Source: Scyliorhinus canicula (Eukaryota). Taken from it: a DNA stretch of 64,000 nt. The position numbers were made by a program, and so were the translations under genes. Positions 5,959 to 54,749 of the stretch are shown piece by piece. The notes beneath the pieces were generated by a model, which saw only the letters and a list, made by a program, of their open reading frames with translations, was not told the origin of the DNA and searched no databases. The stretch covers positions 192,839,199 through 192,903,198 of the forward strand of contig NC_052146.1 of the NCBI RefSeq assembly GCF_902713615.1, in the 5' to 3' direction. Within the stretch, counting starts at the first letter, position 1. Every line of letters starts with the position of its first letter.

Positions 5959-7540
5959 GAGGATGAGCAAACTGACCACAGGACTGTGTTACAAGGAGCC
6001 ATTCAAGTGGGGTGAGGAAAGAAATCTGGGCGTAATTAGGGATAGTATCGTTAGGGGCATTGACATTATTCTGTGACCAGGATCGAGAGTCCCGAAGGTT
6101 GTGTTACCTGCCTGGTGCTCCGGTTTGGGACATCTCAGCTGGGCTGCAGAGAAACCTGGAGTGGGAGCATTAAGATCCAGTTGTAGTGGTCCACGTACGT
6201 ACCAACAACATAGGTAGGACAAGAACGGAAGCTCTGCTGAAGGAATATTAGGGGCTAGGGCAGCACGGTGGCAGAGTGGTTAGCACTACTGCCTCATGGT
6301 GCCGGGGACTCTGGTTCGATCCCAGCCCCAGGTCACTATCCGTGTGGGGTTTGCACGTTCTCCCCGTGTCTGTGTGTGTCTCACCCACGTAACCCCAAAA
6401 GATGCTCAGGGTAGGTGGATTGGCCATAATAAATTGGCCTTTTAATTGGGGGGAAAAAAAGAATTGGGTAGTCAACTTTATATTTTTTTAAACGAGCAGC
6501 TAGGAACTAAAGTAAAAAGCAGAGCCAAAAGGGTAATAATGTCTGGATTACTACCTGAGCCACGAGCTAATTGGCAATATTAAAGAAGTAAATGTGTGGC
6601 TTGAAGGTTGGCGTGGGAGAAATGGGTTTGAGTTCATGGACTGGCACCAGTCATGGGGAAGGAGGGAGTTGTTTCAATCGGACAGTCTTCACCTGAACCA
6701 AGCTGGGACCAGAGTCCTGACGAATTGCATAACTAGGGCTCTAAACTAAATGGTGGGAGGGGAGGGTTCATCTGTGTGGAAAATTAGAAAATCACAAAAA
6801 GGAGACAGTGAGAGTGCAGGAGAATAATGAGGAGTTTAAATTAGTTAAAGGGGCAAGGGCTCAGGAGAGGTTAGTAAAGGCTCCAGCACATGTAATAGAA
6901 CAGAAAGCAGCAGGAATCTAACTTCAGGCACAGTAAAAACAGATAAAGCTATGGGAAGGTGAGGTGGTCAACGCAGGACTGAGGGTGTTGTACCTAAAAG
7001 CACGCTGTATAGGATAAAAGGTAAACGGTCAGAAGACATTGAATCTGTGGGTAGAGTTGAGGAATTACAAAGAAAAAAAAACCCTGATGGAAGATATGCG
7101 CAGGCCCCCGAGCAATAGCCAGTATGTTAAACAGAAAATCAGGAGATAGAAAAGGCATATAAGAAAGTGAAGGGACAGTGACCACAATATGTTAGAATTC
7201 ACATTGCAGTTTGAGGGGGAGAAGCTGGAATCAGATGTAATAGTGCAATTAAATAAAGGTAACTACAAAGACTTGAGGGAGGAGCTGGCCAGAGTTGATT
7301 GGAAGAGGAGTCTAGCAGTGAGGACCAGCAGTTTTGCGGGTTGTTTGGAAGGCACAACAGAAATTCATCCCAAGACGGAGGAAACAGGCTATGGAAAGGA
7401 CAAGGCAACCATGGCTGACAAGGGAAGTCAAGGAGAGCATAAAAGCAAAGGAAAAAGCATACAATGTGGCAAGGAATAGGGGGAAGCCAGAGCATTGGTA
7501 AGCCTTTAAAAGCAAGAAGAGGACAACTAAAAAAGCAATG
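5959..7540 (+). mobile_element. CR1 LINE 5' part (SGNH-esterase-type ORF1 plus deleted ORF2); its probable 3' end resumes at 11273-11422
   Basis: DSIVRG and LPGA…DPVVVVHV.TNN esterase-like ORF1 remnants, and NKGNYK…ELARVDW from ORF2. Interrupted by a SINE and by the L1. Confidence 0.8.
6258..6492 (+). mobile_element. Short V-SINE (further copies or fragments at about 22583-22807 -, 27279-27410 +, 41410-41518 -, 43464-43653 -, 63337-63564 +, 63826-64000 -)
   Basis: Same tRNA head and V-domain, with an aattgg…aattgggta.tc tail. Confidence 0.9.
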
Positions 7541-7544
7541 GGGA

Positions 7545-10500
7545 GGGCTGGGGGCTATGGGCAGTGCAAACAACAACGGCAACAGTGGGCACCTGCCTTG
7601 TACCCCTGTGTAATTCAAAGCTTCGTGAGCTCATCTCATTAGTTCGCACACTCCTTTGGTGCCACATATAGCAAGCGCACCCAAACCTCGAACAAGTACT
7701 GCCACCCAACCCGGTTGAATGCCTTCTCCGCGTCCACGGACGCCACTACTTCCGGTACCAGGGCACCTGATGGATTCATGACTACATTCAACAACCTTCT
7801 TGTATTACTCGCGAGCTGCCTGCTCTTTACGAAGCTGTTTGATCCTCCGCAGCCACTCCCGGGACACAATCCTCCATCCTACCCACCAGAAATTTAGCCT
7901 ATACTTTCACATCAGTATTCAACAGTGATATGGCCTGTACGACCCACATTCCACCAGGTTTTTCCGCTTTTTCAGGGTTAACGTAATCACTGCCTCCGAG
8001 GGGCAGCACGGTGGCACAGTGGTTAGCATTGTTGCCTACGGCGCTGAGGACCCGGGTTCGAATCCCGGCCCTGGGTCACTGTCCGTGTGGAGTTTGCACA
8101 TTCTCCCCGTGTCTGCGTGGGTTTCGCCCCCACATTCCAAAAGATGTGCAGGACAGGTGGATTGGTCACGCTAAATTGCCCACTTAATTGGAAAAAATAA
8201 TTGGGTACTCTAAATTTATAAAAAAAAAAAAAAAAAAAATCACTGCCTCCGTTATCATTTCCGGCAGCTCCCTCTTCAACGCCCCCAAAAGCTGTGTGCC
8301 AGGTCTGTCGCGAATTCCTTCTAAAATTTTCCCGGATATCCATCCAGCTCTGCGGCCTTCCCTGACTTCATACTCCTGATACTATCCAACACCTCTCTCA
8401 GCCCCAGGGGCTCCTCCAGCGCTTGCCTCTTTATTTTTTCCAACTGGGGAAACTGCAGCTCTCCAAAAACCATCCCAAGTCCCTCTCCTTTGGCCTAGGA
8501 TCCGCCTCGTACAATCCCTGGTAATACTCCCTAAAATGCCTCATTTATCTTCCCTGGCTCCGACACCTCATCCCTAGTCCGTTTCCTCAGTATTTCCCTG
8601 GATGTGGTCTGCTTCTGCAGCTGGTGCGCTAGCACGCTACTCGCCTTCTCCCCATATTCATACTGCACCCCTCTAGCCCTACGTAGCTGTCTACCGCCTT
8701 CCCCGTTGTCAGCCTGTCACATTGCCCCAGCAACCTTTTCCTCCTCCAAAGCCCCTCGACAAAACTACACTAAATCTCCACTAATTCCCCTTTCCAGCAC
8801 TTGGCCCATGGCCTTGAATGTTATGATATTTCACGTGCTCATCCACTTTTTAAAGGTTGTACAAAGATACGTAGGTTTCCCGCCTCTAGTACCCTCCCAA
8901 ACAGTGCATTCCAGGCTCCCACTACCATCTGAATGAAAAACCCTTTTCTCAAATCTCCTCTAAACCTCCTGCCCCTCACTTCAAGATTATGCTCCCTCGT
9001 TATTGACCCTGTAACTAAGGGGAATTGCAGAAAAACAGATCTGTATGAACCTGAACATGCTGCAAATAGCTGAAAACTTCATTGCTTACAAGGCAGCAAA
9101 ATGCACCTGTTTGTCTGCACCTCCGTGGTGGGCACCCTTGAATACTCCCTATCCACCTCCATTATCTCGCTCTTTAGGCGGTCATCTGCCAAAAACCCTG
9201 AATCAAACCTCCACCCTGACCTCTGCTCTCATCCCGGTCTAAGCCGAATCTCCAACCAGTGGGGCACGTTGTCCGAAATAACTATCCCCGAGTACTCTGC
9301 CCCCTCCACCCCAACCAAAATCTCCCGGCTCACCACAAAATGAATACACCTTATAAATGTGTGGGAGAAAAAAAGGAATACTTCCTTCCCCCCAGGTTCT
9401 TGAAGCGCCGCGGATCCACCATAACCATCCTTTCTATAAACCCACCCAGCTCTTTTGCCATTCGTACCCTACCCATCGACCTGGGGCTTGACCTATCCAC
9501 CTTCGTCTCTAGGACACTTAAAATCTCCCATAATCAACTGGTGCGTTGCCAAGTCCGGAATTGTTGCCAGCAACCCTCTCATAAAACCTACATCATCCTA
9601 ATTTGGTACATACACGTTTGCCAACACCACCAGCCTCCCTTCCAATACCCCACTCACAATCACATATCCCCCACCCAGATCCCTCACTTCCTTCAAACTC
9701 ACAAATCTCATTTTCTTACTCATTAAAATTGCCACTCCCCTCGATTTCGAATCGAATCCAGAGTGGAAAACCTGCCCGACCCACTCATTCCTTAACCAAA
9801 CCTGGTTCTTTACACGGAGGTGTGTCTCCTACAGAGAGACCACCTCCACTTTCAAGCTCCCGAGGTGCACAAACACCCCCGATCATTTAAACGGTCCATT
9901 AAATCCTCGGATGTCTCCCGTCACCAACCTTACCGGAGGCTTACGCCTCCGTTTCCCACTACCATCCATCCTGCTGACCTTGCCCTCTCCGACCTAAATG
10001 AAGACTCAACCTGAATTCCAGGTCACCTCCCCAAAAGCAAACGATAAACACAAACAGCCCCATAAAACAAGAGGGAGGATGCACATAAACCTTCGACCCG
10101 TACCAACCCAACAGTAAACAACAAACCCAAAAAAGGACGCCCTCCAAATCGGAGGGAGCAAAAAGAAAAACTCCCTACCCCCACTTAAACCATATTCCCA
10201 ACCATTCCGAAATGCCAGTTCCCCAGCATCGTTCCACTCCGTTCTACCCAAGTTTATGCTCCTTGATGAAGTCCTCGGCCGCTTCTGGGATCTCGAAGTA
10301 ATATTCCTGGCATTCAAACATCACCCATAATTTCGCTGGGTAGAGTACACCACACCTGATCCTTCGCCGGCACAACTTCACCTTGGCCTTCTTGAACCCT
10401 GCCCGCCGTTTTGCCAACTCGGTCTAATGTCGTGATATATTCGGACCTTGTTCTCCTCCCATTTTCAGATACACTTCTCCCTAGCCCAACGCAACATCTC

Positions 10501-11272: not shown

Positions 11273-11909
11273 TAAGTCAGAGATAGATAGTTCTTGATTA
11301 ATATGGGAATTAGGGGTTATGAGGAGAAGGCAGGAGAATGGGGATGAGAAACCTATCAGCCATGATTGAATGGCGGAGCACTCGAAGGGCCGAATGGCCC
11401 AATTCTGCTCCTATGTCTTGTGGAACAGCTGTTTCATATCCACCCTGTCCGTGCCCACATAATCTTGTGCACTTCAATCAGTTCCTTGCTCATTTTAAGT
11501 TCTCGCTCGCTCGCCTCATCCAGGGCCTGAATCACCAGCAATAACAAACAGCACTGAAATTAGCAGCCAGGTAACCTGTTTTGTGATGGTGGTTTAGATA
11601 TTGACCAGGTCACTGGGAGAATGTCCCTTCAGAATAGTGCAGTGGGATGTTTTCGGCCCAGCTGAGAGTGCAGTTAATAATAATAATCTTTATTGTCACA
11701 AGTAGGCTTACATTAAGACTGCAATGAAGTTACTGTGAAAAGTTGGGGCCCAGGTCTAACATTTCACCTGAAAGATGACACCTCAAAAACAGTATAGCAC
11801 TCCTTTAGTTCTGCACTGGAATGTCAGTCTGGAATATGTGACCAAGTTGTGCTTGAGCCCACATCCTTCTGGCTGATGATGCAATAGTTCTACTAACTGG
11901 GCCATGTCT

Positions 11910-12144
11910 TTTTTTTTCTTCTTCTAAAATTTAGAGTACCCAATTAAATTTTTCCAATTAAAGGGCAATTTAGCGTGGCCAATCCACCTAGCCTGCACAT
12001 CTTTGGGTTGTGGGGGCGAAACCCACGCAAACACGGGGAGAATGTGCAAACTCCACACGGACAGTGACCCAGAGCCGGGATCGAACCTGGGACCTTGGCG
12101 CCGTGAGGCAGCAGGGCTAACCCACTGCGCCACCGTGCTGCCCG
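11910..12144 (-). mobile_element. Short poly(A)-tailed V-SINE
   Basis: 15-bp TSD aactgggccatgtct (11895-11909 and 12145-12159). Confidence 0.92.
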
Positions 12145-17056: not shown

Positions 17057-17541
17057 TTTTTTTTTATAAATTTAGAATACCCAATTCATTTTTTCCAATT
17101 AAGGGGCAATGTAGCGTGGCCAATCCACCTAGCCTGCACATCTTTTTTTTAAATAAATTTAGATTACCCAATTATTTTTATTTATTTTTTCCAATTAAGG
17201 GGCAATTTAGTGTGGCCAATCCACCTACTCTGCACATTTTTGGGTTGTGGGGGCGAAACCCACGCAAACATGGGGAGAATGTGCAAACTCCACACGGACA
17301 GTGACCCAGAGCCGGGATCAAACCTGGGACCTCAGCGCCGTGAGGCAGCTGTGCTAACCACTAGGCCACCATGCTGCCCTTAGCCTGCACATCTTTTGGA
17401 TTGTGGGGGCGAAACCCACGCAAACATGGGGAGAATGTGCAAACTCCACACGGACAGTGACCCAGAGCCAGGATCGAACCTGGGACCTCGGCGCCGTGAG
17501 GCAGCAGGGCTAACCCACTGCGCCACCGTGCTGCCCTGAAC
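17057..17541 (-). mobile_element. Short V-SINE carrying a second copy (about 17146-17380) inserted in its body
   Basis: Outer TSD atccaccatctg and inner TSD tagcctgcacatcttt. Confidence 0.92.
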
Positions 17542-18412: not shown

Positions 18413-19337
18413 ACAAAGAGCAGTACAGCACAGGAACTCCAAGCCTGCGCCGATCACATGTCCTTAATAGACCAACTGCCTGTATCCTTCTATACCCTGT
18501 CTGTTCATGTGCCTATTCAGATAAGTCTTAAAGGTCGCTAACATATCTGCCTCAACCATCTCATTTGGCAGTGCATTCCAGGCCACCACCACCCTCTGTG
18601 TAAAAACAATAAAATAAAACTTCTCCCGCACATCTCCACTGAATCTTTCCCCCGTCACCTTGAACTTGTGTCCCCTTGTAATTATCGTTTCCGCCCTGGG
18701 AAAAAGCCTCCAACTATTCACCGTATCTGTACCCTTAATTATTTTATAAACTTCTATCAGGTCGCCCCTTAGCCTCCATCTCTCTTGGGAGAACATTCTC
18801 AGTTTATTCAATCTCTCCTCATAGCTAATACCCTCCATACTAGGCAACATCCTGGTACGTCTTTTCTGTACTCTCTCCAAAGCTACCACGTCCTTCTGGT
18901 AGTGCGGTGACCAGAATTGGACACAGTATTCCAAATGTGGCCGAACCAACGTTCTATACAATTGTAACATAATTTTCGAGCTTTTATACTCGATACCCCG
19001 TCCTAAGAAGGCAAGCATGCGATATGCTTTCTTTACCACCATTTCCACTTGTGCTGCCATTTATAAGAATCTGTGGACCTGCACGCCCAGATCTGTGTCT
19101 CTTTGCTCCTGATGGTTCTGCCATTTATTTTATAGCTCCCACCTGAATTGGATCTACCAAAATGGATCACTTCACATTTGTGCGGGTTAAGTTTCATCTG
19201 CCATTTTGCTGCCCAATTGTGCAGCCTATCTATATCCTGTTGTATTCTCTGACAATCTTCATCACTATCCGCAACTCCTGTAATCTTAGTATCATCCGCA
19301 AACTTGCTAATCAGACCCACTACATTTCTTCCAAGTC

Positions 19338-21868: not shown

Positions 21869-21900
21869 TGGGGGGGGGGGGGGGGAAGAGGTGGTTGGGT

Positions 21901-21935
<35 letters not shown>

Positions 21936-21943: not shown

Positions 21944-23977
21944 AGTACCAGAGAGGAGCGTAGATTGTACAGCAGAGAGGGCGAGAGTGCACATTGCAGG
22001 TAAAGGACATATCACTGATTGTACAGTAGGAGAGCATGTTGGACAGCTGAAGGCAGTATCGTTCAATAGCAATGGGAGAGAAAAAATACGTTCAACCCTT
22101 GATTTACATAGAATAAAAGGAAAGTACCCTGCAGACTAAGGATATTAAAGATTGCCATATTTTCACAAATCCTAGTCATGCAGCACAGAAAAGGCCCTTT
22201 GGCCCATTGAGTTTGCGCCAGTCAAAAACAACCACCTAATGATTGTAATCCCACTTGACCCATGGCCTTGTATGCCTTGGTATCAGAAGTGCACATCTAA
22301 ATACTTCTTAAATGATATGAGGATCTCTGCCTCCACCACCCTTTCAGGCAGGGGGTTCCACACTCGCACCACCTTCAAATCTGGCAGAATTCCAATGGAA
22401 ACCTTTTTTTAAAAAAAAGATACATAATAAACTACGTGTATTTAAAACAAAAAAAAAATTAAATTGGGCTTGTGCTCAAATGCAATCCATATGGGGATTA
22501 AATGTTTATCTCTAAAATAGCTTTTTGGGTGTAAGGAGTACATGTCAGAAAGTCACTGTACAGATTTTAAAAATTAAAATAACTTTTTTTTTAAAGTGTA
22601 AATTTAGAGTTCCCAATTCTTTCCAATTGAGGGGCAATTTAGTGTGGCCAATCCATCTACCCTGCACATCTTTTGGGTTTTGTGGGGGTGAGACTTGCGC
22701 AGACACGGGCAGAATGTGCAAATTCCACACGGACAGTGACCCAGGGCCAGGATCAAACCCGGGTCCTCGGTGCCATGAGGCAGCAGTGCTAACCACTGGG
22801 CTACCCCAATGAAAATAAATTCTTGACTTAGGCAGGGTGCAGAAGAGGTTTACTGGAATGGTATCAGGGATGTGTGACTTCAGTTACATGGAGAGACTAG
22901 TGAAACTGGGATTGTTCTCCTTGGAGCAGAGAAAGGGGATCAGACAGGTTTCAAACTCGGGTACAGTTTTGGTAGAGTATAGAAACATTAACTGTTCCAG
23001 TGGCAGAATGGTCAGAAACTAGAAGACGCTCATTTAGGCAGTTGGTAAAAAGCCAGAAGGAACATGAGGGGAAAATTTTTACAGTGTGTTATGATCTGGA
23101 ATGCAGCTCCTTGAAAGAATGCTGGAAACAGATCAATTTAATGGGAAATTACTTATTTGAAGAGGAAAAAAAATGGCACAGCTGAGGGGAAAAGGCAGAT
23201 GACTGGGCTCATTCAAAGAGCCAACACATGCACAGTGGACCAAATAGACTCCTCCTGAGTTCTACCATAGCTTGAACTGAAAGGCTTAAACTATCAGGAA
23301 AGATTGACCCTCCTGGGACTCTTCTCTGGAGAGGTTACAGAGTGGTGACCTAATAGAGGCCTTGGTTAAGAAGTCTTAATAGGGTAAACATAAGGAACAT
23401 GTTTCCCTTTGTGGGAGGCACCAAGACCAAGGGCCATAAATATAAGATGGTCACTAATAAATCCAATAAAGAATTCAGGAAAAGTTTATGAACCCAGAGA
23501 GTGGTTTAAAAAGTTTAACTTGTAACCATATGAAGCAATTGATGCAAATCATATAGATGCATTTATGGGAAAGCTAGATAAGTACATGAGGGAGAAAGGA
23601 ATAGAAGGATATATCATTGAGGTTATATGAAATAAGATGAAGGTGATGCATGTAGAGCATAAATACTGACGTGGACCAGTTGGGTTGAATGGACCGTGCT
23701 GAACATTCTAGTAATTTTATTTTAAAAGTACATGTTTGTAGAGTTGAGACTTATTTTGATAATTGTTTGACAGAAACGGATTAGGTTTTTAAAAATAATT
23801 TAAATCATTATCCGTTTTTGTAAACATGGTCCATGTTTGATCTGTCTTTTGTCGTGTGAAGATTCTGCCTTCAGTACAGGTCCAGTTTAACCAGTCCGAA
23901 GTATGTTCAATGTAGTTAACACCCGTGTCTGCTTTCCTGACGTGCTCAGTGACTAGTGTTTCTCCTTCCTGACTCAG

Positions 23978-25245: not shown

Positions 25246-25392
25246 GGGGGGGGGGAGATATGATACATGCGTTGATACGGTCTGGGGGTGTTACAGTTGT
25301 TATGGGTTATTTTGTTGCATTTCATTGTTTGTTATATTTTATATTTTCTGTAAAAATAAATTCCAATAAAAATGATTTAAGAAAAAAAGAAA
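25246..25392 (+). mobile_element. Extreme 3' end of an L1 from the same family as the full-length copy
   Basis: tattttctgtaaaaa…ttccaataaaaa.gatttaa plus an A-run matches the reverse complement of 45351-45480. Confidence 0.75.
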
Positions 25393-26544: not shown

Positions 26545-27161
26545 GGACTGGTCGTGTGTGTGTGTCACAGAGTCTCGCTCTATGCAGACTGTATGTACGG
26601 ACCCATTGGAGGGGATGGAAGAAATCATGAGGATTCTAGGAGAATTTGGCCGGTTTTCAGGGTATAAGTTAAATATGGGGAAAAAGTTAGATGTTTGCGA
26701 TCCAGGCGAGGGGACAGGAGAGGCAATTGGGGGGGGGGGGGGGGGGGGGGCTGCTGTTTAGATTAGTAGGGGGAAGCTTTAGGTACCTCGGCATTCAAGT
26801 GGCACGGGAATGAGACCGGCTGCATAAATTAAATCTGGCCTGGCTAGTAGACCAAATGAAGGACGATTTTCGGAGATGGGACGCGCTCCCGTTGTCATTA
26901 GCTGGGAGGGTGCAGATGGTGAAGATGACGGTCCTCCTGAGGTTCCTGTTCATGTTTCAATGTCTTCCCATCACTGTTAGGGTTCGTCGACTTCTTTGCA
27001 GAAAATCAATCATCAGCAGAAGGGGGGGGGTTAATAAATGTGGGACCTGTAGGGGAGGGAGACGGCTTTTGCACTATATTTATAGTTTCATGTGCATTGT
27101 TTATTGTGTTGTTGTCATAATACCCAAAAATATCTCAATAAAATGTTTATTTAAAAAAAAA
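26545..27161 (+). mobile_element. 5'-truncated, internally deleted L1 (RT fragment fused to the ORF2 end, 3' UTR and A-tail)
   Basis: SLYAD, FSGYKLN and RWDALPLSLAGRV..KMTVL..FQCLPI, then a jump to the ORF2 end. AATAAA plus an A-run at about 27137-27161. Confidence 0.85.
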
Positions 27162-27549
27162 TGTTTGAGAATCGCATTGGGACATTTTACCACATTAAAG
27201 GTGATGTATAAATGAAGTTTAAGATGGTTGTCGTTGGGATGTTGGCATTGTCCATTATCCCCTTCCACTTCGAAATAACATTCTCCCTGTGTCTACGTGG
27301 GTCTCACTCCCACAACCCAAAATTGTGCAAGTAGATGGATTGGCCACATTAAATTGACCCTTATTTGGGAATAAAGGAATTCGGTACTCTAAATTTATTT
27401 TTAAAAAGAAATAAGTATGAGGATTTTTTTGGAAGACCTTCAAATTCCCTAAATTTGAAGAATAGATTTTAGGAAGGCAGGAAAAATTGATGCCTGATCA
27501 GCAAACCTCTCCAATTCCAAATTTTGCTAAATTTCATCTGAAGGATCCT

Positions 27550-39480: not shown

Positions 39481-39600
39481 CAAGATGGATGTCCGACGTT
39501 AGAAGACCCGTTGTATCTTTTTTTAATATAAAAAGTACGCAATTATTTTTTTCCCTCCACTGCAGCTACGTTCACAGCCAGGTGTCCCTGGAGAGGGAGC

Positions 39601-40110: not shown

Positions 40111-43100
40111 GTGGCAGGGTGGTGCCCTGGCACTGCTAAGGTGTCAGGCTGGCATTTTTGCACGTGCGCAATTGGGCCGGGTTGCCCACCCTGGGTGTTA
40201 GAGGGGCCAAGGGACCCTTCTATGTTGCTTTCGGGCTGGGGTGAGGTCAGGGATTTTATTTGTGGTCCTCTGAGATCGGGAGGAATGGCGTCCTGATCTC
40301 CCGCTACAACGGGCATTTCCGGCGAGCAGAGCTCCCCATTGTATAAAACGAACAGGGCTATGTGCGGCCTCGGCCACGCAATCCCCGTTCAGGTACCTTA
40401 TTCAACACGAGTAGCATTGAATAGCCACTTGTTTCTCGGCATTACGAGTGCCAGGAAACACTAGGCTAAACACGCTCGCTAGGGGACTTTGTTCCCTCTT
40501 TGGGAAGATTGCGCCTATTGTCACCTTTTTGCCAGAGATTTGTACTGCTAATTTACTGCTCTTATTGCTTTTCCAAAAGCCACCTATATCACTACACTAT
40601 ACACTGCTATGTCTATCTCAATTTCGATTGATCAGTCTGTCTCTTCTAAGATGTGCGAGAGATCTGCTTGACAGAATTGTCTCCATTTACTTGATGTAAC
40701 GGTGATTTTCTTTCAAAATGGGCAAAGCAGATGGACATCCACAGATCAACCTGAAATTTGTTATGCCTGCACACTGTAAAGTGAACTATTAAAGGCCCAG
40801 TAATTTTCAAACCAACCCATAACCACACTTGCTAATGATGCAGATGTTTATCATTGCATTTGATTGGAAACTTCTGTACTTTCAGTCAATCTATCTTTAT
40901 GAGGCTCAGAATAAATGGTGGGATAACTTTTGGTCATTTCCAGGATTTATTTGATATGGATGCTGATTTTACCATTACATTTCACATTCGCAAATTACAC
41001 CTCAGCAAATGTGAATTTGAAGCAAATGTCAAAGAGGAACAAAGATGGTTCATGTTGCAATGCTGCAGAGTTTGGATAAATTATTTGTATAGACTATGTA
41101 ATAAACAGTGGGGTCCTCAGTGCAGACCTGTTCTGGTTTTGCAGCCTTAAATAAAAATAGTATTTTAAAATAACCTCAAAAGATCAAGTAAAATGTTGTG
41201 AATTACTTTTCAGTAATTTGCGAAGTTGGAGAGTTAGCTGCACTTGTGTTTGTGTCTTTCTTTGTGCGTCTGTCTGCATGTGTCTTTCTGCATGCTTGCC
41301 AGCATTAACATTTTAAACAAACATTGCTTATAAACTTCGAATAAATTCAGGGACTTGTGCCAAGTAAGATATTACTTTACGTTTTAAAGGTCTGTTGCTT
41401 GTTTCCTTTTTTAAATAAAATTTAGAGTACCCAATTTTGTTTCCCCAACTAAGGGGCAATTTAGTGTGGCCAATCCACCTATCCTGCACATCTTTGGGTT
41501 GTGGGGATGAGACCCACATGTTTCCTTTCTAATGTCCCAACTTGCTGTGTTGCTGTAAATTCTCTGATTTACTATTCATGGCAGTAATTTACTGTTCACA
41601 GTTTTCCAGTAAAGATAATAGATCCAAAGCACTGTTAAACCGCTGGAGCGTTGGATGTGCCTTCAGCTAAAGGAAACCTGAGCTGAATGCTGATCAACTG
41701 ATTCCTCCTCAAAGTTCAGGTCCCTAAGAATCCAGTTCAGAGGGTGTCATACTGTGTTTAGGAAGGGAAAAGGAACCATTACATAATCCATATAATAACA
41801 AGTCTGTTTAGCTTGTAACTGTTTATGCTAATCTCGTGAAGCAAAGATAGCCAAATGTAGGGAAAGGAGAATTCAGTCTCAGGGAATTTGATAACTGATG
41901 CAAGTTTCTGTCCCTTTTTGTTTCTGCTCTTCACTGAAAGTTTCAAACTGTATTACATGAGCACTAAGATTCTTGCACCTTTAATTTTGCTACATTTCGC
42001 TTAAATAAATACCTTGAACTCTCCATGCTAGTTTGTAAACCAAATACTCTGTCGTTGGCTACGGTGTTCAGTGCAAAACTAGTAGTTAATAGGTCACGTT
42101 TTCTTTTTAAATTTGGATGTGCCTTGAATTATGCACTTCAGATAAACTGTGTACAGAAGAAAGAATGTTTGAAACATTTCCAGCACTTCTCATCACATGA
42201 CACTGATATGCAATCAAACAGATGGAGAGTAATTGGATGAATTCATGAATGGGATACCTCTTGCATTGATTGAGTTGGTGTGGGTGTCTTTTGGTGAAGG
42301 ATGTGAATCTTTGGGAGCACTGAAAGGTGGTGAGAGGAAAGGGGGAAAGTTATAGGATTAGCAGGGAAGGGAAAATTAAAGAATTTTATTGATGTGTCAA
42401 TGGGCTAAGACAAATGCTTTTTTCATTTCTGATTTTAATAAAGAAGAACTGCTTGCAAAACATTGCCCAATGTCAGACTAACTGGACATCCTACTTATAG
42501 TAGCAGCTTCAATGCGCAGCTCTAGGGAGAATAAAATCAATACAATTGTCTGCTGAATATAGCCAGACAGTGGAACAAGCACTTAGCAATTCTGGATGAG
42601 CTATGCTGTCTTTTCTCTAAGTGATAACGTGACTCACGTATGGCACTATCCCCTCAGTGTTAAGAGAGTGGAGGTTCAAGTCCCACTGCAAAAACTTGAA
42701 TATGATCCAGGCTAACATTCCCAATGAAATGCTGAGGGGCTGATGCACAGTTATAGACAGCTATTCAAATGAGAAATTAAACCAAGGCCCAGCCTACCCC
42801 TTCATGGATGTAACAAAGCCACTTGTATGTAAGCATTGGGTTGGAAATGCTAATTTGTGTTCAGCATGGTCTCCAAATGGCAATGTGATTAAAGACCATA
42901 TTATCTTTGTCAGCAGTATTGGTTGAAGTAAAGATATTGATGAGGACACCAAAGTGAACTCCCTTATTGTCCTTTGATGTAGTGGGAGCCATGGGAGCTT
43001 TTATTTATCTCAACCTGAGAGGGTAAAGGGTGCCTTGATCATCTGAAAGATGACATCTCCAATATTTTTAAGGTAGATAATATATGGCGTCAGCAGATCT

Positions 43101-45605
43101 GGAAGGTGCCAGAATTGGGTTTGACACTGGTTTTACTCCCTATCTCTGAAGTGTAATGTTGAGCAGAATGTAGAACATTCTAGCTGACCCCATGGGATTG
43201 CTGCCCAGCCAGTGGGGTTTAAATTGCCCCTTTTATATGTTTGCAAAAAGCAAGAGCTGCCTCACTTGCTAGCATTCATCTTTGCCCCGTCTCAACCCAA
43301 TCATGCGAGCACCAGCCTGAGAATTGAACTAAAGTGTTTTGCAAATGGAGAACCTGGAGGCATTTCCATTCACTGGACCAGTGGGCTCATTTGAGATTTT
43401 TTGTTCATCTCTGACCTGGTATATAGCATGTTACTTGATGAAAGACAATTTAAAGAAGAGTTGTTTTTTTTTTAAATTTAGAGTACCCAATTAATTTATT
43501 CCAATTAAGGGGCAATTTAGCATGGCCAATCCACCTATCCTGCATATCTTTGGATTGTTGGTGTGCGACCCATGGAGACACGGGGAGAATGTGCAAACTC
43601 CACACGGACAGTGACCCAGGGCCGGGATCGAACCTGGGTCCTCGGCGCCGTGGGGTAAAAAAGAGTTTAATGTTAACCCTGACAGCTCCACAGCTGAGCC
43701 TGGGTGCAGTTAAAAAAAAAACACTTCCAGGTACGTTGCATTTTACAGCTGAAATTATTCCATGCTATGCTACAGGCAGAATCTTTTAAATGATAGTAAA
43801 GGAGATCTTTAAATCCAGTCTTCGTGTAAATGCAGCTCTAATGAATATTTTTTCAGTGCTTCTTCCAGAATGAAGGCAGAGAGGAGGAAGAAAGCAAATA
43901 AAATGATTTGCAATTATTACATTAAGAAAGGGGGGTGTAACAATTAAGGTAAACTCCTTAGAATAGCGACGGTTATGGGTAGATTTAGTAAAGGAGTCCA
44001 AAATTGAGGTTTTAATAAGAGTAGATGGGAGAAAAACTGACAAAATAATTGGAGGGGGAAAGCCAGAGGGGACTTTTATCTCAGTGAGTTCTGGTCTGGA
44101 ATGTGCTGATTGAGTGTGTGATAGAAGCAGATTCATTGATAAAGGGAACTGGAGGGAGGAAAGATTTTCAGAACTCTAGCAAAAGAGCAGGTGCTAATTG
44201 GATAGCTTTTTCGAAGGGCTGGCATAGGCACAATTGGCCAAGTAGCCTCAGTCCATGTCTATCGTGTTGTTATTTGTAAAATAAGGGAATGGAATAGAAT
44301 ACTCTAGGAGAAAAATCAGAGTGAGCAATGAGAGTGCTTTCTTTCTTTATTTCTTGGATTTTAGGGTAATTCAATAATAAATCGCTATGAGAAGTTTTAT
44401 CGCCTTGGCAAAGTGGGGCACAAGTTAATGGCTTAAATGACTGCTTCGCCTTTGGCTACTGTTATTCCCTAGAATTTGAAGAGTTAAATTTAATATAAAC
44501 CAGACAAGCAACTCCCACGCAGTCTGACCATTTTTGACAATGAGTGATTGCTTTACTTGGACTCTGCAATACAAAGCAGTGAGTAATGTTTTCTCCAGAA
44601 AGTAGGAAAAAGACTCATGCTGGGTTATTATATTCGGTTCTAGGAGTCTGCCTTGCAAGTGGATCGTCCACAGTTCTCTGTACCTCATTAATAATGACTT
44701 TCTATTTCATAAGGACAAAGACTTATACAGGCAACTGGTTTATTTTTACACTAATCCACCAAAATCTCATGTCGTCGACAGTAGAACTTGCGCAATCTGT
44801 CAGATGCTGTTTTAATTATGTGCCCTTTTATAGCTTGTATCCTGTAACCCCATTAATGATCAGGACATAATGAACTGCAGATGGTATTGAACTAGTGCCG
44901 TATTTCAGCCTGAATCTCTGAACATCATAAACACAGCACTCTTCACTAAGAAAATGGAGAATGATCCAGTTCATTTAAGAAAAAAATGTTTGATCCCTGT
45001 TGTTTCATGAGGGCTTTGCCTTTTAATCTTTGTTCTTGACAATTGCTGTGAAAACATTTCTGCAACTGGGAACCACCTTTATTCTGGTTTGCCTATATCC
45101 CATCCAAGGTGTCAACTGTAGCTTAGTTGGTGGAAACTCTGTGCCAGGAAGTTGTGGTTCAAAGTCTCAGTCCAGAGATTTGGGCAGAAGGCTGACTGTC
45201 TCATATGCAGTACCGAGGGAATGCGGCTCTGTCAGAGGGTGCTATCTTCTGGATATGGATGTTAAAGTTAGGTCCCATTTGCTTTTCCGGGAGAACGGAA
45301 AAGGTCCCTCGGTGCTATTTCAAAGGCGAGTTCACCAGGCAGTCATTCCTTTTTTTTAAATAATTTTTATTGGAATTTTTTACAGAAAATATAAAAATAT
45401 AGCAACAAGCAGTAATATGCAACTAACAGCCCCATAACAACCACAATTCCCCCCATACCGTAACATCACATTCCCCCCATCCCCCCCAACAAGAGAACTT
45501 AACCATAAATTAAAATTAAATAAATCAATTTTAAATAAAATAAGTAAACATAATCGACGTTCCCCCCCCACCCCCCCGGGTTGCTGCTGCTACTGTCCCA
45601 GTACC

Positions 45606-48600
45606 CTATCGTTGAGCCAGAAAGTCGAGGAAATGTTGCCACCGTTTAAAGAACCCTTGCACCGATCCTCTCTGGGCGAATTTAACCTTCTCAAGCTTAA
45701 TGAAGCCCGCCATGTCATTGATCCAGGTCTCCACGCTTGGGGCCTCGCGTCCTTCCACTGTAGCAAAATCCTTCGCCGGGCTACTAGGGACGCAAAGGCC
45801 AGCACACCGGCCTCTTTCGCCTCCTGCACTCCCGGCTCTACCCCAACCCCAAAGATCGCGAGTCCCCATCCTGGCTTGACCCTGGATCCCACCGTCCTCG
45901 CCACCCCCTTCCAGAACTCCTCCAATGCCGGGCATGCCCAGAACATATGGGCATGGTTCGCTGGACTCCCCGAGCACCTGACACACCTGTCCTCACCCCC
46001 AAAGGACCTACTCATCCTCGTCCCAGTCATGTGGGCCCGGTGCAGCACCTTGAATTGGATGAGGCTAAGCCGCGCACACGAGGAGGAAGAATTTACCCTC
46101 TCCAGGGCATCAGCCCATGTCCCATCTTCGATCTGTTCCCCCAGTTCCCCCTCCCACTTCGTTTTCAGCTCCTCTACTGACGCCTCTTCCACCTCCTGCA
46201 TAAGCTTGTAGATATCGGATATCTTCCCCTCCCCGACCCAGACCCCCGAGAGCACCCTGTCACTCACCCCCCTCGCGGGGAGCGCAGGGAATCCCTCCAC
46301 CTGCCGTCTAGCAAATGCCTTTACCTGCAGATATCTAAACATGTTTCCCGGCGGGAGCCCAAATTTCTCCTCCAACTCCCCCAGGCTCGCAAACCTTCCG
46401 TCGATAAACAGGTCCCTCAGCTGTCTAATGCCCGCTCTATACCATCCCCGAAATCCCCCATCCATGTTCCCCGGGACGAACCTATGGTTCCCCCTTAACG
46501 GAGCCTCCATCGAGCCCCCCACTTCTCCCCTATGTCGCCTCCACTGCCCCCAAATCTTGAGGGTAGCCGCCACCACCGGACTCGTGGTATACCTCGTGGG
46601 AGGGAGCGACCACGGCGCCGTTACCAGGGCCCCCAGGCTTGTATCCCCACAGGACGCTCTCTCCATCCGTTTCCATGCTGCCCCCTCCCCCTCCATCACC
46701 CACTTACGCACCATCGACACGTTGGCCGCCCAGTGTACCCCGAGAGGTTGGGCAACGCCAGCCCCCTCCACTCCACCCCCCCCCCCCCCCCCCCCCCCCC
46801 CCATCTCTACTCCGCTCCAAGAAGACCCTCTTCACCCTCGGGGTGCCATGCGCCCAAACAAATCCCATGATGCTGCTGGTCACCCTTTTAAAAAAGGCCC
46901 TAGGGATAAAGATGGGCAAGCACTGGAAGAGGAACAAGAACCTCGGGAGAACCGTCATTTTGACGGAGTGCACTCTGCCCGCCAGCGATAGCGGCACCAT
47001 GTCCCACCTTTTAAATTCCTCCTCCATCTGTTCCACTAGTCTGGTGAAGTTAAGCTTATGAAGAGCCCCCCAACTCCTGGCCACCTTCACCCCCAGGTAC
47101 CTGAAACTCTTCACTGCCCTCCTGAAGGGGAGCCTCCCAATTCCCCCCTCCTGATCTCCCGGGTGCACTACAAATACCTCGCTCTTTCCTAAGTTTAGCT
47201 TATAGCCCGAGAAGCCCCCAAATTCCGCTAACAGCTCCATCACCCCCGGCATTCCCCCCTCTGGGTCCGCCACATATAACAGCAGGTCGTCCGCATACAG
47301 CGATACCCGGTGCTCCTCCCCACCCCGCACCAGACCCCTCCACCTCCCTGACTCCCTCAACGCCATGGCCAGCAGTTCAATCGCCAGTGCAAAGAGCAGG
47401 GGGGACAGGGGACACCCCTGCCTGGTCCCACGATAAAGCCTAAAATACTCCGATCTCCTTCCATTTGTGACTACACTCGCCATCGGCGCCACGTAAAGCA
47501 GCCTCACCCATTTGATGAATCCCTCCCCAAATCCAAACCTCTCCAGCACCTCCCACAGGTACCCCCACTCAACTCTATCAAACGCTTTCTCTGCGTCCAG
47601 CGCCACCACTATCTCCGCCTCGCCCTCCACTGCCGGCATCATGATAACATTGAGCAGTCTCCGCACATTCGTGTTGAGCTGCAGCCCCTTGACAAATCCT
47701 GTCTGATCTTCATGAATTACCTCTGGCACACAATCCTCTATCCTGGTAGCCAGGATCTTCGCCAGCAACTTAGCGTCTACGTTAAGGAGCGAGATAGGCC
47801 TATATGATCCGCACTGCAAGGGGTCCTTATCCCGTTTTAGGATCGAAGAGATCAGTGCCCGTGACATCGTCGGGGGCAAAGCCCCCCCCCACCCCCCCCC
47901 CAACACGCCTCATTGAAAGTTCGCACCAGCAGGGGACCCACCAGGTCCGCATATTTTTTGTAAAATTCTGCCGGGAACCCGTCCGGCCCCGGGGCCTTAC
48001 CTGACTGCATTTGCCCGATCCCCCTGACTAGCTCCTCCAACACTATCGGCGCCCCCAGCCCCTCTACCAGCCTCTCTTGAACCCTTGGGAAACATAGCCT
48101 GTTCACGAAGCTCTCCATCCCCTCTCTCCCCCTCGGAGGTTCCGACCGGTACAATCCCTCGTAAAAGTCCCTAAAGACCCCGTTTACTTCTGTCCCCCTC
48201 TGCACTACATTTTCACCCCCATCCTTCACTCCACCAATTTCCCTAGTCGCATCTCGCCTACGGAGCTGATGCGCCAACATCCTGCTCGCCTTCTCTCCAT
48301 ACTCATATACCGCGCCCTGCGCCCTCCCCCACTGTGTCTCCGCCTTTCTGGTGGTCAACAAGTCAAAATTGGCCTGCAACCTGCGCCGTTCTCCCAGCAA
48401 CCCTTCCTCCGGTGCCTCCGCGTATCTCCTGTCCACCTCCAGAAGCTCTCCCACCAGTCTCTCCCTCTCCCTCCTTTCCCTGTGGGCCCGGATGGAGATC
48501 AGCTGCCCCCCGGATCACTGCTTTCAGAGCCTCCCAGACCATCCCCACCCGGACCTCCCCTGTATCATTGGTATCCAGATACCCCTCAATTCTTCTCCGA

Positions 48601-49430
48601 ACCCTCTTACACACCACCTCCTCCGCCAGCATCCCCACATCCAGGTGCCAAAGCGGGCGCTGGTCCCGCGCCTCTCCCATCTCCAGATCAACCCAGTGCG
48701 GGGCATGGTCCGAAATCGCTATGGCCGAATACTCTGCATCCTGCACCCTCGGGATCAATCCCCTGCTCAGGACAAAAAAGTCTATCCGGGAATAAACCCT
48801 ATGGACGTGAGAGAAAAAGGAATACTCCCGCGCTCTCGGTATCCCAAACCTCCAGGGATCCACCCCTCCCATCTGGTCCATGTATCCCCTCAGCACTTTG
48901 GCCGCCGCCGGTCTCCTACCCATCCTTGAACTGGACCGGTCCAGTGTGGGATCCAGCACTGTGTTAAAATCTCCCCCTATGATCAGGCCCCCTGCCTCCA
49001 GGTCCGGGATGCGGCCCAACAATCGCCTCATGAAGCCAGCATCATCCCAATTCGGGGCATAAACGTTCACCAGCACCACCTTCTCTCCCTGCAGCCTACA
49101 CCTCACCATGATATATCTGCCCTCCTTGTCCGACACCACCTCAGCCGCCTCAAACGCCACCCTCTTCCCCACTAGAATCGCCACCCCCCGGTTCTTTGCG
49201 TCCAATCCTGAATGATAAACCTGCCCCACCCACCCCTTCCTCAGACGAACCTGGTCCGCCACCTTCAGGTGGGTCTCCTGGAGCATAGCCACGTCCGCCT
49301 TCAACCCCCTTAGATGGGAGAACACCCTGGTTCTCTTAACCGGCCCGTTCAGCCCCCTCACGTTCCAGGTAATCAGCCGGATCAGAGGGCAACCCGCCCC
49401 CCTCCCCTGCCGACTAGCCATAGCTTGGCA
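45606..49430 (-). pseudogene. L1 ORF2 (APE endonuclease + reverse transcriptase + C-terminal Cys/His motif), split by frameshifts
   Basis: TWNVRGLN, LQETH, GGDFN, YSRIDF and SDH (EN); KAPGPDG, YRPISLLN, LDAEKAFD, GTRQGCPLSP and YADD (RT); CVRC..HMFWAC. Spread over ORFs 48363-49514, 47852-48454, 46704-47906, 45590-46804 and 45606-45986. Confidence 0.93.
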
Positions 49431-50048
49431 GATGTTCGCCCCAGGCCAGCACACCCCGCTCGACCCGTTCCCCATGGCGATAGCGACTCTCCCCCCCCCC
49501 CCCCGCGCCTCCATCGGCTCCTTCCTAGTCGTTCCAGCAGCAACCCGGTATCCCCCCCGAGGCTAGGACCCCTCCTAGCCGCGACGCACCCTCCATGGTA
49601 CTTCCGTGAGTCAGCTGACTTCTGCTGACCCCGGCAGCTCCCGCCAAAACCTATCCCCTCCCGGCTTGGGGTCATCCCCCTCTTGCCACACCTCCTTGGC
49701 ATTACTGCAGCGCGGGAAAAAAGACCCGTAGAGGCCCCGCCCCCCACCGCCCCGCAGCGCGGGAAACCAGAGGAAAGCCCGCGCTTTCACACTGCCACAC
49801 CCCACCCTTCTGACGCAGTTCCCCAAAATCCAGTTTCCCCTCAATCCCCAGCCCCGTACAGAAGAGAACATATAGAACACAAACCCCCAACACTCCCCAC
49901 CTAACCCACAACCATGCCCAACAAACAAACCCACCCGTAACCAGAGCAAACAGAAAACCAGCATACATAACACACATGCCGAAGTTGAAACAGTTGGAAT
50001 AAAACAGCCACAGCGGAAACAACGCCGGCCAAAGTATGTCCCCAGGCC

Positions 50049-50810
50049 CTAGTTAGAGTCCAGCTTCTCCGCCTGTACAAAGGCCCACGCCTCCTCCGGG
50101 GACTCGATGTAATGGTGCCGGTCCTTGTATGTCACTCACAGGCGCGCAGGCTGCAGCATTCCAAACCTGACCTGCTTAGCATGAAGCACCGCCTTCGTCC
50201 GGTTGAACCCGGCCTGCCGCTTAGCCACCTCCGCACTCCAGTCCTGGTAGATCCTCACTACCGAATTCTCCCATTTACTGCTCCTCTCTTTCTTGGCCCA
50301 GCGCAGCACACACTCCCGGTCACTGAATCGATGGAACCGCACCAGCACTGCCCTCGGGGGCTCACCTGCCTTGGGCCTCCTGGCCATCACTCGATGAGCT
50401 CCCTCGAGCTCCAGGGGCAAATGGAAGGACCCCGCTCCCATCAACGAGCTCAACATCGTGGTCACATACGCCGGGAGATCCGACCCCTCCGCCAGGCCCA
50501 GGATCCTCAGATTCTTTCGCCTCGTGCGAACGTCCAGCTCCTCCAAGCGGTCCTGCCACTTTTTATGAAGTGCCTCGTGCAACTCCACTTTCCCATCGAG
50601 GACCACGGCCGCCTCCTCTCTTTCACCGGCCTGCCGCTGCAACTCCCGAATAGACTCCTCCCAAGCCGCCTGGGTCCCAAGCAGCTTGGTCGTAGTTGCA
50701 TTCATGGAGTCCAGCAGCTCAGCCTTCAGCTCAGCAAAACAACGTAGGAGCGAGGCCTGTTGCTCCTGCGCCCACTTCCACCAGTCCTCGGGTGTTGCGC
50801 CGGCCGCCAT
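50049..50810 (-). pseudogene. L1 ORF1 (coiled-coil + RRM, Transposase_22-like) with a premature TGA at 50136-50138
   Basis: RRKNLRILGL, LEGAHR, VLVRFHRFSDRE and IYQDWS motifs are typical of vertebrate L1 ORF1p. The frame continues past the TGA to a natural TAG at 50049-50051. Confidence 0.88.
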
Positions 50811-51162
50811 TTTGTTTTTCTTCCCCCTTTTTTTGGGGGAGTTGCTGCAGCCTTTTTCACCATATAGTGTGGGGCAAGTTCTTCCAGGCACCTTCCTCCA
50901 CCGGGATGCGTAGAAACAGCGCCGTTTGGGGCCCTCAAAACGGCCCAAAAGTCCTTAAATAGCGGGAGCGCCGGCCGCCATTTTGTTTTTCTTCTCCCGT
51001 TTTTTTGGGGGAGTTACTGCAGCCTTTTTCTTCTTCCCACTCCGGGTGAGCACCATATAGTGTGGGACAAGTTCTTCCAGGCACCTTCCCCCACCGGGAT
51101 GCGCAGAAACAGCGCCGTTTGGGGCCCTCGAAACGGCCCAAAAGTCCCTAAATAGCGGGAGC
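50799..51162 (-). repeat. Tandem duplication (about 170 and 190 bp units) of the L1 5' UTR plus ORF1 N-terminus
   Basis: gccggccgccattttgtttttcttc…aaatagcgggagc occurs twice head-to-tail. The ORF1-proximal copy lacks 21 bp. Confidence 0.93.
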
Positions 51163-54100: not shown

Positions 54101-54406
54101 CATGCAGACACGGGGAGAATGTGCAAACTGCACACAGTCACCCAAGGTCGGAATCAAACCCGGATCCCTGGCACTGTGAGTGCTAACCGCTGAGTGAAGA
54201 TATTGGTCAAATTCTCGGGTATTCACTCACCAACCATTTGGAGTCTCCTTGTTAAAGCTGCACTCTGTTCCTCACATGGTTTTCTTCCCTGTTTTCGGCA
54301 CAGTAAATAATGCAGAACAGAATTACAGATATAGTAAGCTACTGTCTTAGCTTTAGAACATAGAACACACAGTGCAGAAGGAGGCCGTTCGGCCCATCGA
54401 GTTTCA

Positions 54407-54749
54407 GGGGCAGCACGGTAGCATGGTGGTTAGCATTAATGCTTCACAGCTCCAGGGTCCCAGGTTCGATTCCCGGCTGGGTCACTGTCTGTGTGGAGTC
54501 TGCACGTCCTCCCCGTGTGTGCGTGGGTTTCCTCCGGGTGCTCCGGTTTCCTCCCACAGTCCAAAGACGTGCGGGTTAGGTGGATTGGCCATGCTAAATT
54601 GCCCTTAGTGTCCTAAAAAGTAAGGTTAAGGGGGGGTTGTTGGGTTATGGGTATAGGGTGGATACGTGGGTTTGAGTAGGGTGATTATTGCTCGGCACAA
54701 CATCGAGGGCCGAAGGGCCTGTTCTGTGCTGTACTGTTCTATGTTCTAT
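54407..54749 (+). mobile_element. Long HE1-type V-SINE with a CR1-derived (TGTTCTA)n tail, nested in an opposite-strand copy (54354-54918)
   Basis: tRNA head, V-domain and tail gggcctgttctgtgctgtactgttctatgttctat. At most a 4-bp duplication (gagt). Other long-type copies or fragments at about 1-200, 24733-24880, 34183-34493, 36977-37285, 51915-52215, 53905-54190, 55427-55755 and 60221-60387. Confidence 0.9.

What the first reader, a model, noticed from the sequence alone, without database searches (positions are those of the whole stretch)
7985..8251. A shark V-SINE that appears to have switched partner LINE from CR1 to L1
Seen: the same tRNA-head/V-domain SINE body has two tails. Long copies (e.g. 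54407-54749) end in a (TGTTCTA)n tail shared with the CR1 at 18413 and have little or no TSD. Short copies of about 235 bp have lost that tail, end in tctaaattt plus an A-run, and carry long TSDs: 14 bp (8001), 15 bp (11910), 12 and 16 bp (17057 nest), 10 bp (5'-truncated copy at 41410) and a degenerate 14 bp (63337). The resident full-length L1 has the same signature (A-tail, 16-bp TSD), and I see no extended tail homology between SINE and L1. Established: HE1 SINEs share their 3' end with HER1 (CR1 clade). Poly(A) plus a long TSD is the signature of L1 ORF2p retrotransposition, best known from mammalian SINEs such as Alu. Inference: an Alu-like, poly(A)-dependent SINE/L1 partnership arose independently in this shark lineage from a CR1-dependent ancestor. 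I cannot tell whether this has been published.
Basis: partly seen in the sequence, partly recalled or inferred. Interest (0 to 1): 0.72.

Follow-up and report, generated by a model that had tools for sequence, protein, structure and literature searches.

The report
A-tailed shark SINE with L1-style insertions
One branch of a common shark short mobile element has swapped its usual CR1-type tail for a short A/T tail and inserts between long duplications like the L1 elements beside it, so L1 probably copies it, as L1 copies Alu in humans; this is not proven.

Summary
The window has 13 copies of a ~235-bp tRNA-head/V-domain SINE ending in AATTGGGTACTCTAAATTT, a variable T-rich stub and an A-run.

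- **Short form:** ten copies can be scored for target-site duplications (TSDs). Eight have clear ones (7-17 bp, median 14); two are marginal.
- **Long forms:** seven long copies, with two different LINE-type hairpin tails, have none above chance (Mann-Whitney p=0.00035).
- **A-runs:** they are not copied from the target, and TSDs start A-rich (p=0.007).
- **L1:** the resident 5.9-kb L1 (endonuclease and reverse transcriptase match human ORF2p) has an A-tail and a 16-bp TSD. Four L1 3' ends in the window show no significant similarity to the SINE tail.

L1 as the driver is the best reading but is only inferred. The origin of the last ~40 nt is unknown, and a LINE carrying that tail elsewhere in the genome is not excluded. 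"Independent origin" was not tested.

New here: the body/A-run junction varies, and T-runs lengthen as A-runs shorten. This resembles mammalian T+ SINEs, but AATAAA occurs in only 3 of 13 copies.

This scan found the same subfamily before on other DNA of this genome, with the same verdict.

The parts
7999..8239 (+). Short A-tailed V-SINE copy (the finding): tRNA-like head with A and B boxes, V-domain, tail AATTGGGTACTCTAAATTTAT, then A20. TSD AATCACTGCCTCCG at 7985-7998 and 8238-8251. Inserted into an old antisense L1 fragment (7551-9900).
11909..12143 (-). Short SINE, full length, A9 tail, perfect 15-bp TSD AGACATGGCCCAGTT. It is 97% identical to the 5' part of the 17384 copy.
17057..17536 (-). 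Nest of two short SINEs. The outer copy (17384-17536 plus 17057-17146) has a 16-bp TSD with 1 mismatch. It is split by the inner copy (17143-17379), which has a perfect 17-bp TSD made of SINE sequence.
22584..22805 (-). Short SINE lacking about 9 nt at the 5' end, A9 tail, 11-bp TSD with 1 mismatch.
27278..27409 (+). 5'-truncated short SINE. Tail is TTTATTTTT plus A5. TSD is 7 bp.
41404..41517 (-). 5'-truncated short SINE, A6 tail, perfect 10-bp TSD AAAGGAAACA.
43464..43654 (-). 5'-truncated short SINE, A10 tail directly after TCTAAATTT, 12-bp TSD with 1 mismatch.
6258..6497 (+). Old short SINE (73-80% identical to the others). T7 run plus A3. Only a 6-bp repeat, at chance level.
63337..63568 (+). 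Old short SINE with a degenerate 14-bp TSD (11 of 14 matches).
63825..64000 (-). Short SINE cut by the end of the window. Tail is TTTATTTCT plus A6.
61771..61803 (+). Tail-only fragment of the short SINE (TTTATTTTT plus A6), preceded by a 10-nt inverted copy of TACTCTAAAT. No TSD found.
39517..39560 (-). Tail-only fragment of the short SINE next to an L1 RT fragment. No TSD found.
54407..54751 (+). Long V-SINE, tail type 1: a stable hairpin GGGCCGAAGGGCC inside an outer stem, then (TGTTCTA)n. Target duplication about 3-4 bp. Further copies at 24733-24885(-) and 60221-60389(-).
55427..55737 (+). Long V-SINE, tail type 2 (..GTGCAGGCCCGATGGGCCGAATGGCCTCCTTCTGCACTGTA..). Inserted into another SINE with a 0-1 bp duplication. 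Further copies at 34184-34470(+), 36977-37244(+), 51920-52222(-) and 54763-54920(-).
18413..19060 (-). CR1-clade LINE 3' fragment. Its last ~27 nt match tail type 1 at 24 of 27 positions.
45350..51221 (-). Near full-length L1. A 270-aa ORF lies in the ORF1 position. ORF2 is in four frame-shifted pieces (endonuclease, reverse transcriptase, zinc knuckle). The 3' end is CAATAAAAATTATTT plus A8. TSD AGGAATGACTGCCTGG at 51212-51227 and 45335-45350.
26560..27161 (+). Fragment of a second L1 family. Its 3' end is CAATAAAATGTTTATTT plus A9.
25267..25386 (+). 3' UTR fragment of the same family as the full-length L1 (77.6% identity). It ends CCAATAAAAATGATTTAAG plus A7.

Best explanation
The stretch is one young copy of an abundant subfamily of the elasmobranch tRNA-derived V-SINE (HE1-like). 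This subfamily lacks the CR1-type hairpin tail. It ends in AATTGGGTACTCTAAATTT, a short T-rich stub and poly(A).

**Shown:**
- The subfamily exists.
- Its A-runs are not part of the target.
- It inserts with 7-17 bp staggered-break duplications.
- Its TSDs start A-rich.
- It is often 5'-truncated.
- It kept inserting over time, including into its own copies.

**Inferred:** its RNA carries a 3' poly(A) that anneals to a T-rich nicked target strand and is reverse-transcribed in trans by the ORF2 protein of an L1-clade LINE, without a shared 3' sequence. This is the 'relaxed' recognition known from mammalian and flowering-plant L1. The long forms use CR1-type enzymes that recognise the hairpin tail and leave almost no duplication.
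For: - Thirteen short copies share one tail. The 15-mer GGGTACTCTAAATTT occurs 12 times against 2.3 expected.
- TSD scores are far above control in 8 of 10 scorable copies and at control level in all 7 long copies.
- Left TSD copies carry 0-4 A where the right side has A6-A20, so the A-runs are real tails.
- 21 of 36 of the first four TSD bases are A, against 12.3 expected under a control with the same extension bias (p=0.007).
- TSD lengths (median 14) fit the L1-clade range of 7-18 bp, mode 13-15. The RTE mode is 10-12, and L2 TSDs are short and variable (PMC6007223 and PMC12801901, both citing Ichiyanagi and Okada 2008).
- The window holds true L1s. The RT piece matches human ORF2p at E=4e-82 and the endonuclease piece at E=3e-44. 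One is near full length with an A-tail and a 16-bp TSD.
- There is no significant similarity between the SINE tail and four L1 3' ends.
- The short tail has no stable hairpin (-7.5 to -9.9 kcal/mol, z -1.0 to 0.0). Tail type 1 folds at -18 kcal/mol.
Against: - Only 64 kb could be examined.
- The ~40 nt after GCTAAATTGCCC are not significantly similar to the long body, so they could come from a LINE not present here.
- The base before the TSD is not enriched for T (3 of 9), so the classical TT|AAAA site is not demonstrated.
- Seven of 13 copies have T4-T7 directly before the A-run. This would end a polymerase III transcript before an inherited A-tail.
- A-tails and long TSDs are not exclusive to L1.
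- No evidence on timing or on an intact L1 source.
Confidence: 0.6

Rival explanations
1. Stringent partner. The last ~40 nt of the short form (ATTGGAAAAAATAATTGGGTACTCTAAATTT) were taken from the 3' end of a specific LINE that lies outside this window. This could be an L1 family with that 3' UTR or another A-tailed clade such as RTE. That LINE recognises the sequence, as in classical SINE/LINE pairs.
For: - The segment is well conserved among copies.
- It has no significant similarity to the long body.
- A weak recurrent helix, GCCC(C)UUAAUU / AAUUGGGU, appears in three of four folds.
- L1-clade LINEs with stringent recognition plus poly(A) are known in maize and Chlamydomonas (PMC3472496).
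Against: - No LINE in the window carries the tail. Every match to it is a SINE copy or a tail-only scrap.
- The folds are no better than shuffles.
- TSDs of 14-17 bp are above the RTE mode.
- The RTE signature (TSD starting with T, with a T-stretch about 10 nt upstream) is not seen.
Confidence: 0.22
2. T+-type route. L1 is still the enzyme, but the A-tail is not inherited. Polymerase III stops in the T-run TTTATTTTT and the transcript is polyadenylated afterwards, as in mammalian B2, Dip, Ves and C1 SINEs.
For: - The body/A-run junction varies: TTT|A, TTTAT|A, TTTATTT|A and TTTATTTTT|A.
- Seven of 13 copies have T4 or longer directly before the A-run.
- A-run length falls as T-run length rises (Spearman -0.71, p=0.0066). 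The same pattern is described for T+ SINEs (PMC12984919).
Against: - AATAAA or ATTAAA lies within 60 nt of the tail in only 3 of 13 copies, and the consensus there reads AAAAAATAAT.
- Slippage in old A/T tracts, or subfamily differences, could give the same correlation.
- The sample is only 13 copies.
Confidence: 0.12
3. The flanking repeats are chance matches or alignment artefacts, and the A-runs are A-rich target DNA rather than tails.
For: Two old copies (6258, 63337) have only chance-level perfect repeats.
Against: - Five copies have 10-17 bp perfect repeats, seen in 0.07% or less of controls.
- One TSD is made of the host SINE's own sequence, so the pre-insertion site is known.
- Left TSD copies lack the A-runs.
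Confidence: 0.01

Closest known systems
HE1 / V-SINE superfamily with HER1 (CR1-clade) partner, described from sharks and rays including Scyliorhinus torazame (Ogiwara 1999 and 2002, as tabulated in PMC3747384)
   Same: tRNA-like head with A and B boxes and a conserved central domain. The long forms here end in a hairpin tail shared with a CR1-clade LINE.
   Different: The short form lacks about 100 nt of distal body and the whole CR1-type tail. It ends in poly(A) and has long TSDs. I could not compare it with the published HE1 sequence, which is not held.
Mammalian L1-dependent poly(A) SINEs of the T- class (Alu, B1)
   Same: A-tail, no 3' similarity to L1, TSDs of L1 length, A-rich TSD start.
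   Different: tRNA/V-domain origin. Frequent 5' truncation (at least 5 of 13 copies). A T-run lies before the A-run in many copies. The host is a cartilaginous fish. The TT|AAAA site is not demonstrated.
Mammalian T+ SINEs (B2, Dip, Ves, C1), reported only from placental mammals (PMC12984919)
   Same: A terminator-like T-run directly before the A-tail, with longer T-runs in copies that have shorter A-tails.
   Different: The defining AATAAA signal is absent from most copies.
Poly(A) SINEs of flowering plants with relaxed L1-clade partners (PMC3472496, PMC3747384)
   Same: Poly(A) end, no LINE tail similarity, L1-clade LINEs in the genome.
   Different: Different kingdom. Here the same SINE body also exists with CR1-type tails.
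RTE-related SINEs (PMC6007223)
   Same: TSDs longer than CR1/L2 types. A/T-rich 3' ends.
   Different: RTE TSDs peak at 10-12 bp and start with T downstream of a T-stretch. Here the median is 14 bp and the start is A-rich.

Membership tests
V-SINE / HE1-like SINE | tRNA-derived head with polymerase III A and B boxes | tested here: met
   TGGCGCAGTGG and GGTTCGATCCC are at the expected spacing in copies 11909 and 17384. ARAGORN calls no tRNA in the 11909 head, as expected for a decayed head.
V-SINE / HE1-like SINE | Conserved central V-domain shared across subfamilies | tested here: inconclusive
   Short and long forms share the central block at about 75% identity. No reference V-domain sequence was available, and places 8077-8126 could not be sent to search tools.
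V-SINE / HE1-like SINE | 3' tail shared with a CR1-clade LINE | tested here: not met
   Met for tail type 1 of the long forms (24 of 27 positions; CR1 clade by homologues in birds, turtles and elasmobranchs). Not met for the short form, which is the subject.
L1-mobilised poly(A) SINE (Alu-like, relaxed recognition) | Non-templated 3' poly(A) directly abutting the TSD | tested here: met
   A5-A20 on the right side against 0-4 A at the start of the left TSD copy.
L1-mobilised poly(A) SINE (Alu-like, relaxed recognition) | TSD length in the L1 range (7-18 bp, mode 13-15) | tested here: met
   Lengths of 7, 10, 11, 12, 14, 14, 15, 16 and 17 bp (plus the 11-of-14 repeat at 63337 read). The resident L1 has 16 bp.
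L1-mobilised poly(A) SINE (Alu-like, relaxed recognition) | Target consensus TT|AAAA | tested here: inconclusive
   The TSD start is A-rich (p=0.007), but the base before it is T in only 3 of 9 copies. The sample is too small for a logo.
L1-mobilised poly(A) SINE (Alu-like, relaxed recognition) | No 3' sequence shared with the L1 partner | tested here: inconclusive
   No significant similarity to the three L1 3' ends scored, and none by eye to the fourth. The shared TTTATTT is compositional. Other L1 families of the genome could not be reached.
L1-mobilised poly(A) SINE (Alu-like, relaxed recognition) | Mobilised by L1 ORF2p in trans | not testable with these tools
   Needs a retrotransposition assay.
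T+ SINE | AATAAA signal upstream of the terminator | tested here: not met
   Present in 3 of 13 copies and absent from the consensus.
T+ SINE | Polymerase III terminator (T4 or longer, or TCTTT) directly before the A-tail | tested here: inconclusive
   Present in 7 of 13 copies, mainly the older ones. The youngest copies have T3.
L1 clade (the resident LINE) | APE-type endonuclease plus RT plus C-terminal zinc knuckle, with closest relatives being L1 ORF2p | tested here: met
   Pfam Exo_endo_phos, RVT_1 and a weak zf-RVT. Human ORF2p matches at E=4e-82 and E=3e-44. Teleost proteins named LINE-1 ORF2 are among the hits.

The most novel reading that the evidence does not exclude
The short form is a T+-type SINE outside placental mammals. 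Polymerase III would stop in the terminal T-run, the transcript would be polyadenylated, and a shark L1 would then copy it. This would mean that both polyadenylation of polymerase III transcripts and relaxed poly(A) recognition by L1 exist in a cartilaginous fish.
Probability: 0.1. Interest if true: 0.75.

Novelty: new member of a known kind. Interest (0 to 1): 0.5.

Why it matters
Reviews place 'relaxed', poly(A)-only template choice by L1 in mammals and flowering plants and treat it as parallel evolution (PMC3472496, PMC3747384). SINE/LINE pairs listed for fishes all share a tail.

A high-copy shark SINE that rides on poly(A) would show that vertebrate L1 could do this long before mammals, or that it evolved again. 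It would also offer a natural pair for comparison: the same body with a CR1 tail or an A-tail. This would let researchers study how a SINE changes partner.

I found no paper describing this form in the searchable library. Repbase and Dfam could not be checked.

Tried and rejected
- **Reads:** This lost the genome-wide consensus, the depth step and the empty-site test.
- **Metagenome scan for the 19-nt tail:** 9 hits, all unrelated chance matches.
- **Idea that the short tail is a shortened long body** (ATTGGGTAC against TTGGGTTAC): not significant against shuffles.
- **Idea that the SINE took the last nucleotides of L1** (shared TTTATTT plus A-run): not significant.
- **Idea that the A-run belongs to an A-rich target, as in RTE-type signatures:** rejected, because left TSD copies lack it.
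- **ARAGORN** finds no tRNA in the head of the 11909 copy.
- **Pfam** gives nothing for the L1 ORF1-position ORF beyond a weak coiled-coil hit.
- **Literature searches** found no description of an A-tailed shark V-SINE. The V-SINE paper PMC155270 is not held.

Full report
**What is there**

Window 7999-8239(+) is a 240-bp retroposon. It has a tRNA-like head, a conserved central block, the tail AATTGGGTACTCTAAATTTAT and A20. It lies between two perfect copies of AATCACTGCCTCCG, at 7985-7998 and 8238-8251.

BLAST of this copy against the window finds 13 copies or fragments with the same tail. The tail 15-mer occurs 12 times against 2.3 expected. At least five copies are 5'-truncated. One copy (17143-17379) sits inside another (17057-17146 plus 17384-17536), with a 17-bp duplication made of the host SINE's own sequence. 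This fixes the pre-insertion site.

Pairwise identity ranges from 73% to 97%. Two sub-lineages are visible.

**Long forms**

The same head and centre (about 75% identity) continue into roughly 100 nt of extra body. They end in at least two different tails:
- Type 1 carries the hairpin GGGCCGAAGGGCC and (TGTTCTA)n.
- Type 2 ends ..GATGGGCCGAATGGCCTCCTTCTGCACTGTA(AATTCTATG)n.

A further tail type is at 55051-55427.

The last 27 nt of type 1 match the 3' end of a LINE fragment at 18413-19060(-) at 24 positions. That protein's relatives are the abundant RT proteins of birds, turtles and elasmobranchs, which places it in the CR1 clade. Type 1 tails fold at -18 kcal/mol. The short tails fold at -7.5 to -9.9 kcal/mol, no better than shuffles.

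**Duplications**

I scored flanking repeats with one rule for all copies and for 3000 random element-sized pairs of sites.
- Short copies scored 14, 15, 12, 17, 10, 8, 7, 7, 6 and 6.
- Controls reach 7 in 1.8% of cases and 10 in 0.07%.
- All seven long copies scored 0-2, against a control median of 1.
- Short versus long gives Mann-Whitney p=0.00035.

Two long copies interrupt known repeats, so their targets can be rebuilt. The duplication is 0-1 bp at 55427 and about 3-4 bp at 54407.

**The tails are real poly(A)**

The left TSD copy begins with 0-4 A where the right side has A5-A20. This rules out an A-rich target. The first four TSD bases are A in 21 of 36 cases, against 12.3 expected under a control that mimics the extension bias (p=0.007). 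The base before the TSD is T in only 3 of 9 copies. This fits priming of a poly(A) RNA on a T-rich nicked strand. It does not establish the TT|AAAA site.

**L1 in the window**

45350-51221(-) is a near full-length LINE.
- A 270-aa ORF lies in the ORF1 position.
- ORF2 is in four frame-shifted pieces with endonuclease, RT and zinc-knuckle domains.
- The 3' end is CAATAAAAATTATTT plus A8.
- The TSD is a perfect 16 bp.
- The RT piece matches human L1 ORF2p at E=4e-82 and the endonuclease piece at E=3e-44.
- The best named relative is a Scyliorhinus torazame protein at 71% identity.

Further L1 fragments and 3' ends lie at 7551-9900(-), 16800-16879(+), 25267-25386(+), 26560-27161(+) and 39600-40022(+). 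The SINE tail and the L1 ends share TTTATTT before the A-run. However, local alignments are no better than shuffles.

**Where the short tail comes from**

The short and long forms part after GCTAAATTGCCC. The next ~40 nt of the short form are not significantly similar to the long body. They match nothing else in the window apart from SINE copies. Their origin is open, and this keeps a stringent partner possible.

**A detail not in the finding**

The junction between body and A-run varies among copies: TTT, TTTAT, TTTATTT or TTTATTTTT, each followed directly by A. Seven of 13 copies have T4-T7 there. A-run length falls as T-run length rises (Spearman -0.71, p=0.0066).

Mammalian T+ SINEs show the same relation (PMC12984919). 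In those, polymerase III stops at a terminator and the transcript is polyadenylated. The class is reported only from placental mammals. Its defining AATAAA is present here in only 3 of 13 copies, so I rate this reading low. It is cheap to test genome-wide.

**Comparison with the literature**

- HE1 with its CR1-clade partner HER1 is the published elasmobranch V-SINE (PMC3747384, Table 1).
- TSD lengths are clade-specific: L1 in mammals and zebrafish 7-18 bp with mode 13-15, RTE mode 10-12 (PMC6007223), and L2 short and variable (PMC12801901). All three cite Ichiyanagi and Okada 2008.
- The short form (median 14) falls in the L1 range.
- Relaxed poly(A) recognition by L1 is described for mammals and flowering plants (PMC3472496).
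- Tail exchange between SINEs is a known habit (PMC5499810, PMC11481361).
- I found no paper on an A-tailed shark V-SINE in nine searches.

**Earlier notes of this scan**

At least four follow-ups on other windows of this genome reached the same reading: short-tailed V-SINE, L1-like footprints, L1 likely but unproven. Many first-reader notes repeat it. These are not independent proof, but they show the subfamily is spread through the genome.

**Limits**

The metagenome scan gave only chance hits. Everything therefore rests on 64 kb.

**Verdict**

L1 as driver is the best-supported inference (about 0.6). Neither 'independent origin' nor 'Alu-like' is tested. This is a new shark example of a known kind of SINE behaviour and is of moderate interest.

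Noticed in passing
46776-46802, 26729-26750, 40035-40050, 49491-49504: Long G homopolymers (G27, G22 and G16 on the L1 sense strand) lie just downstream of the RT domain in three separate L1 copies from at least two families. In the full-length copy the reading frame changes there. Another G14 lies near the ORF2 start.
   Followed up: partly
7970-7998 and 43655-43690: The short SINEs at 8001 and 43461 both sit 2-4 nt downstream of the same 11-mer, TCAGGGTTAAC. The flanks are otherwise unrelated (local score p about 0.04).
   Followed up: partly
61750-61803: A 44-nt SINE tail fragment is preceded by a 10-nt inverted copy of TACTCTAAAT. This may be a snap-back or twin-priming scar.
   Followed up: no
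55051-55427 (-) and 35030-35097 (+): A V-SINE carries yet another tail type (..TTTCACAGTAACTTCATTGCAGTGTTAATACAAGCC..). A related tail ends in A9.
   Followed up: no
54350-55740: A dense nest of long SINEs. The 54407 copy is inserted into an antisense type-2 tail, and the 55427 copy into an antisense SINE. Both give reconstructable targets.
   Followed up: yes
21870-21934: A G-rich homopolymer tract (G16 plus G34) of unknown origin. It matches the L1 G-run in BLAST only because both are G-runs.
   Followed up: no
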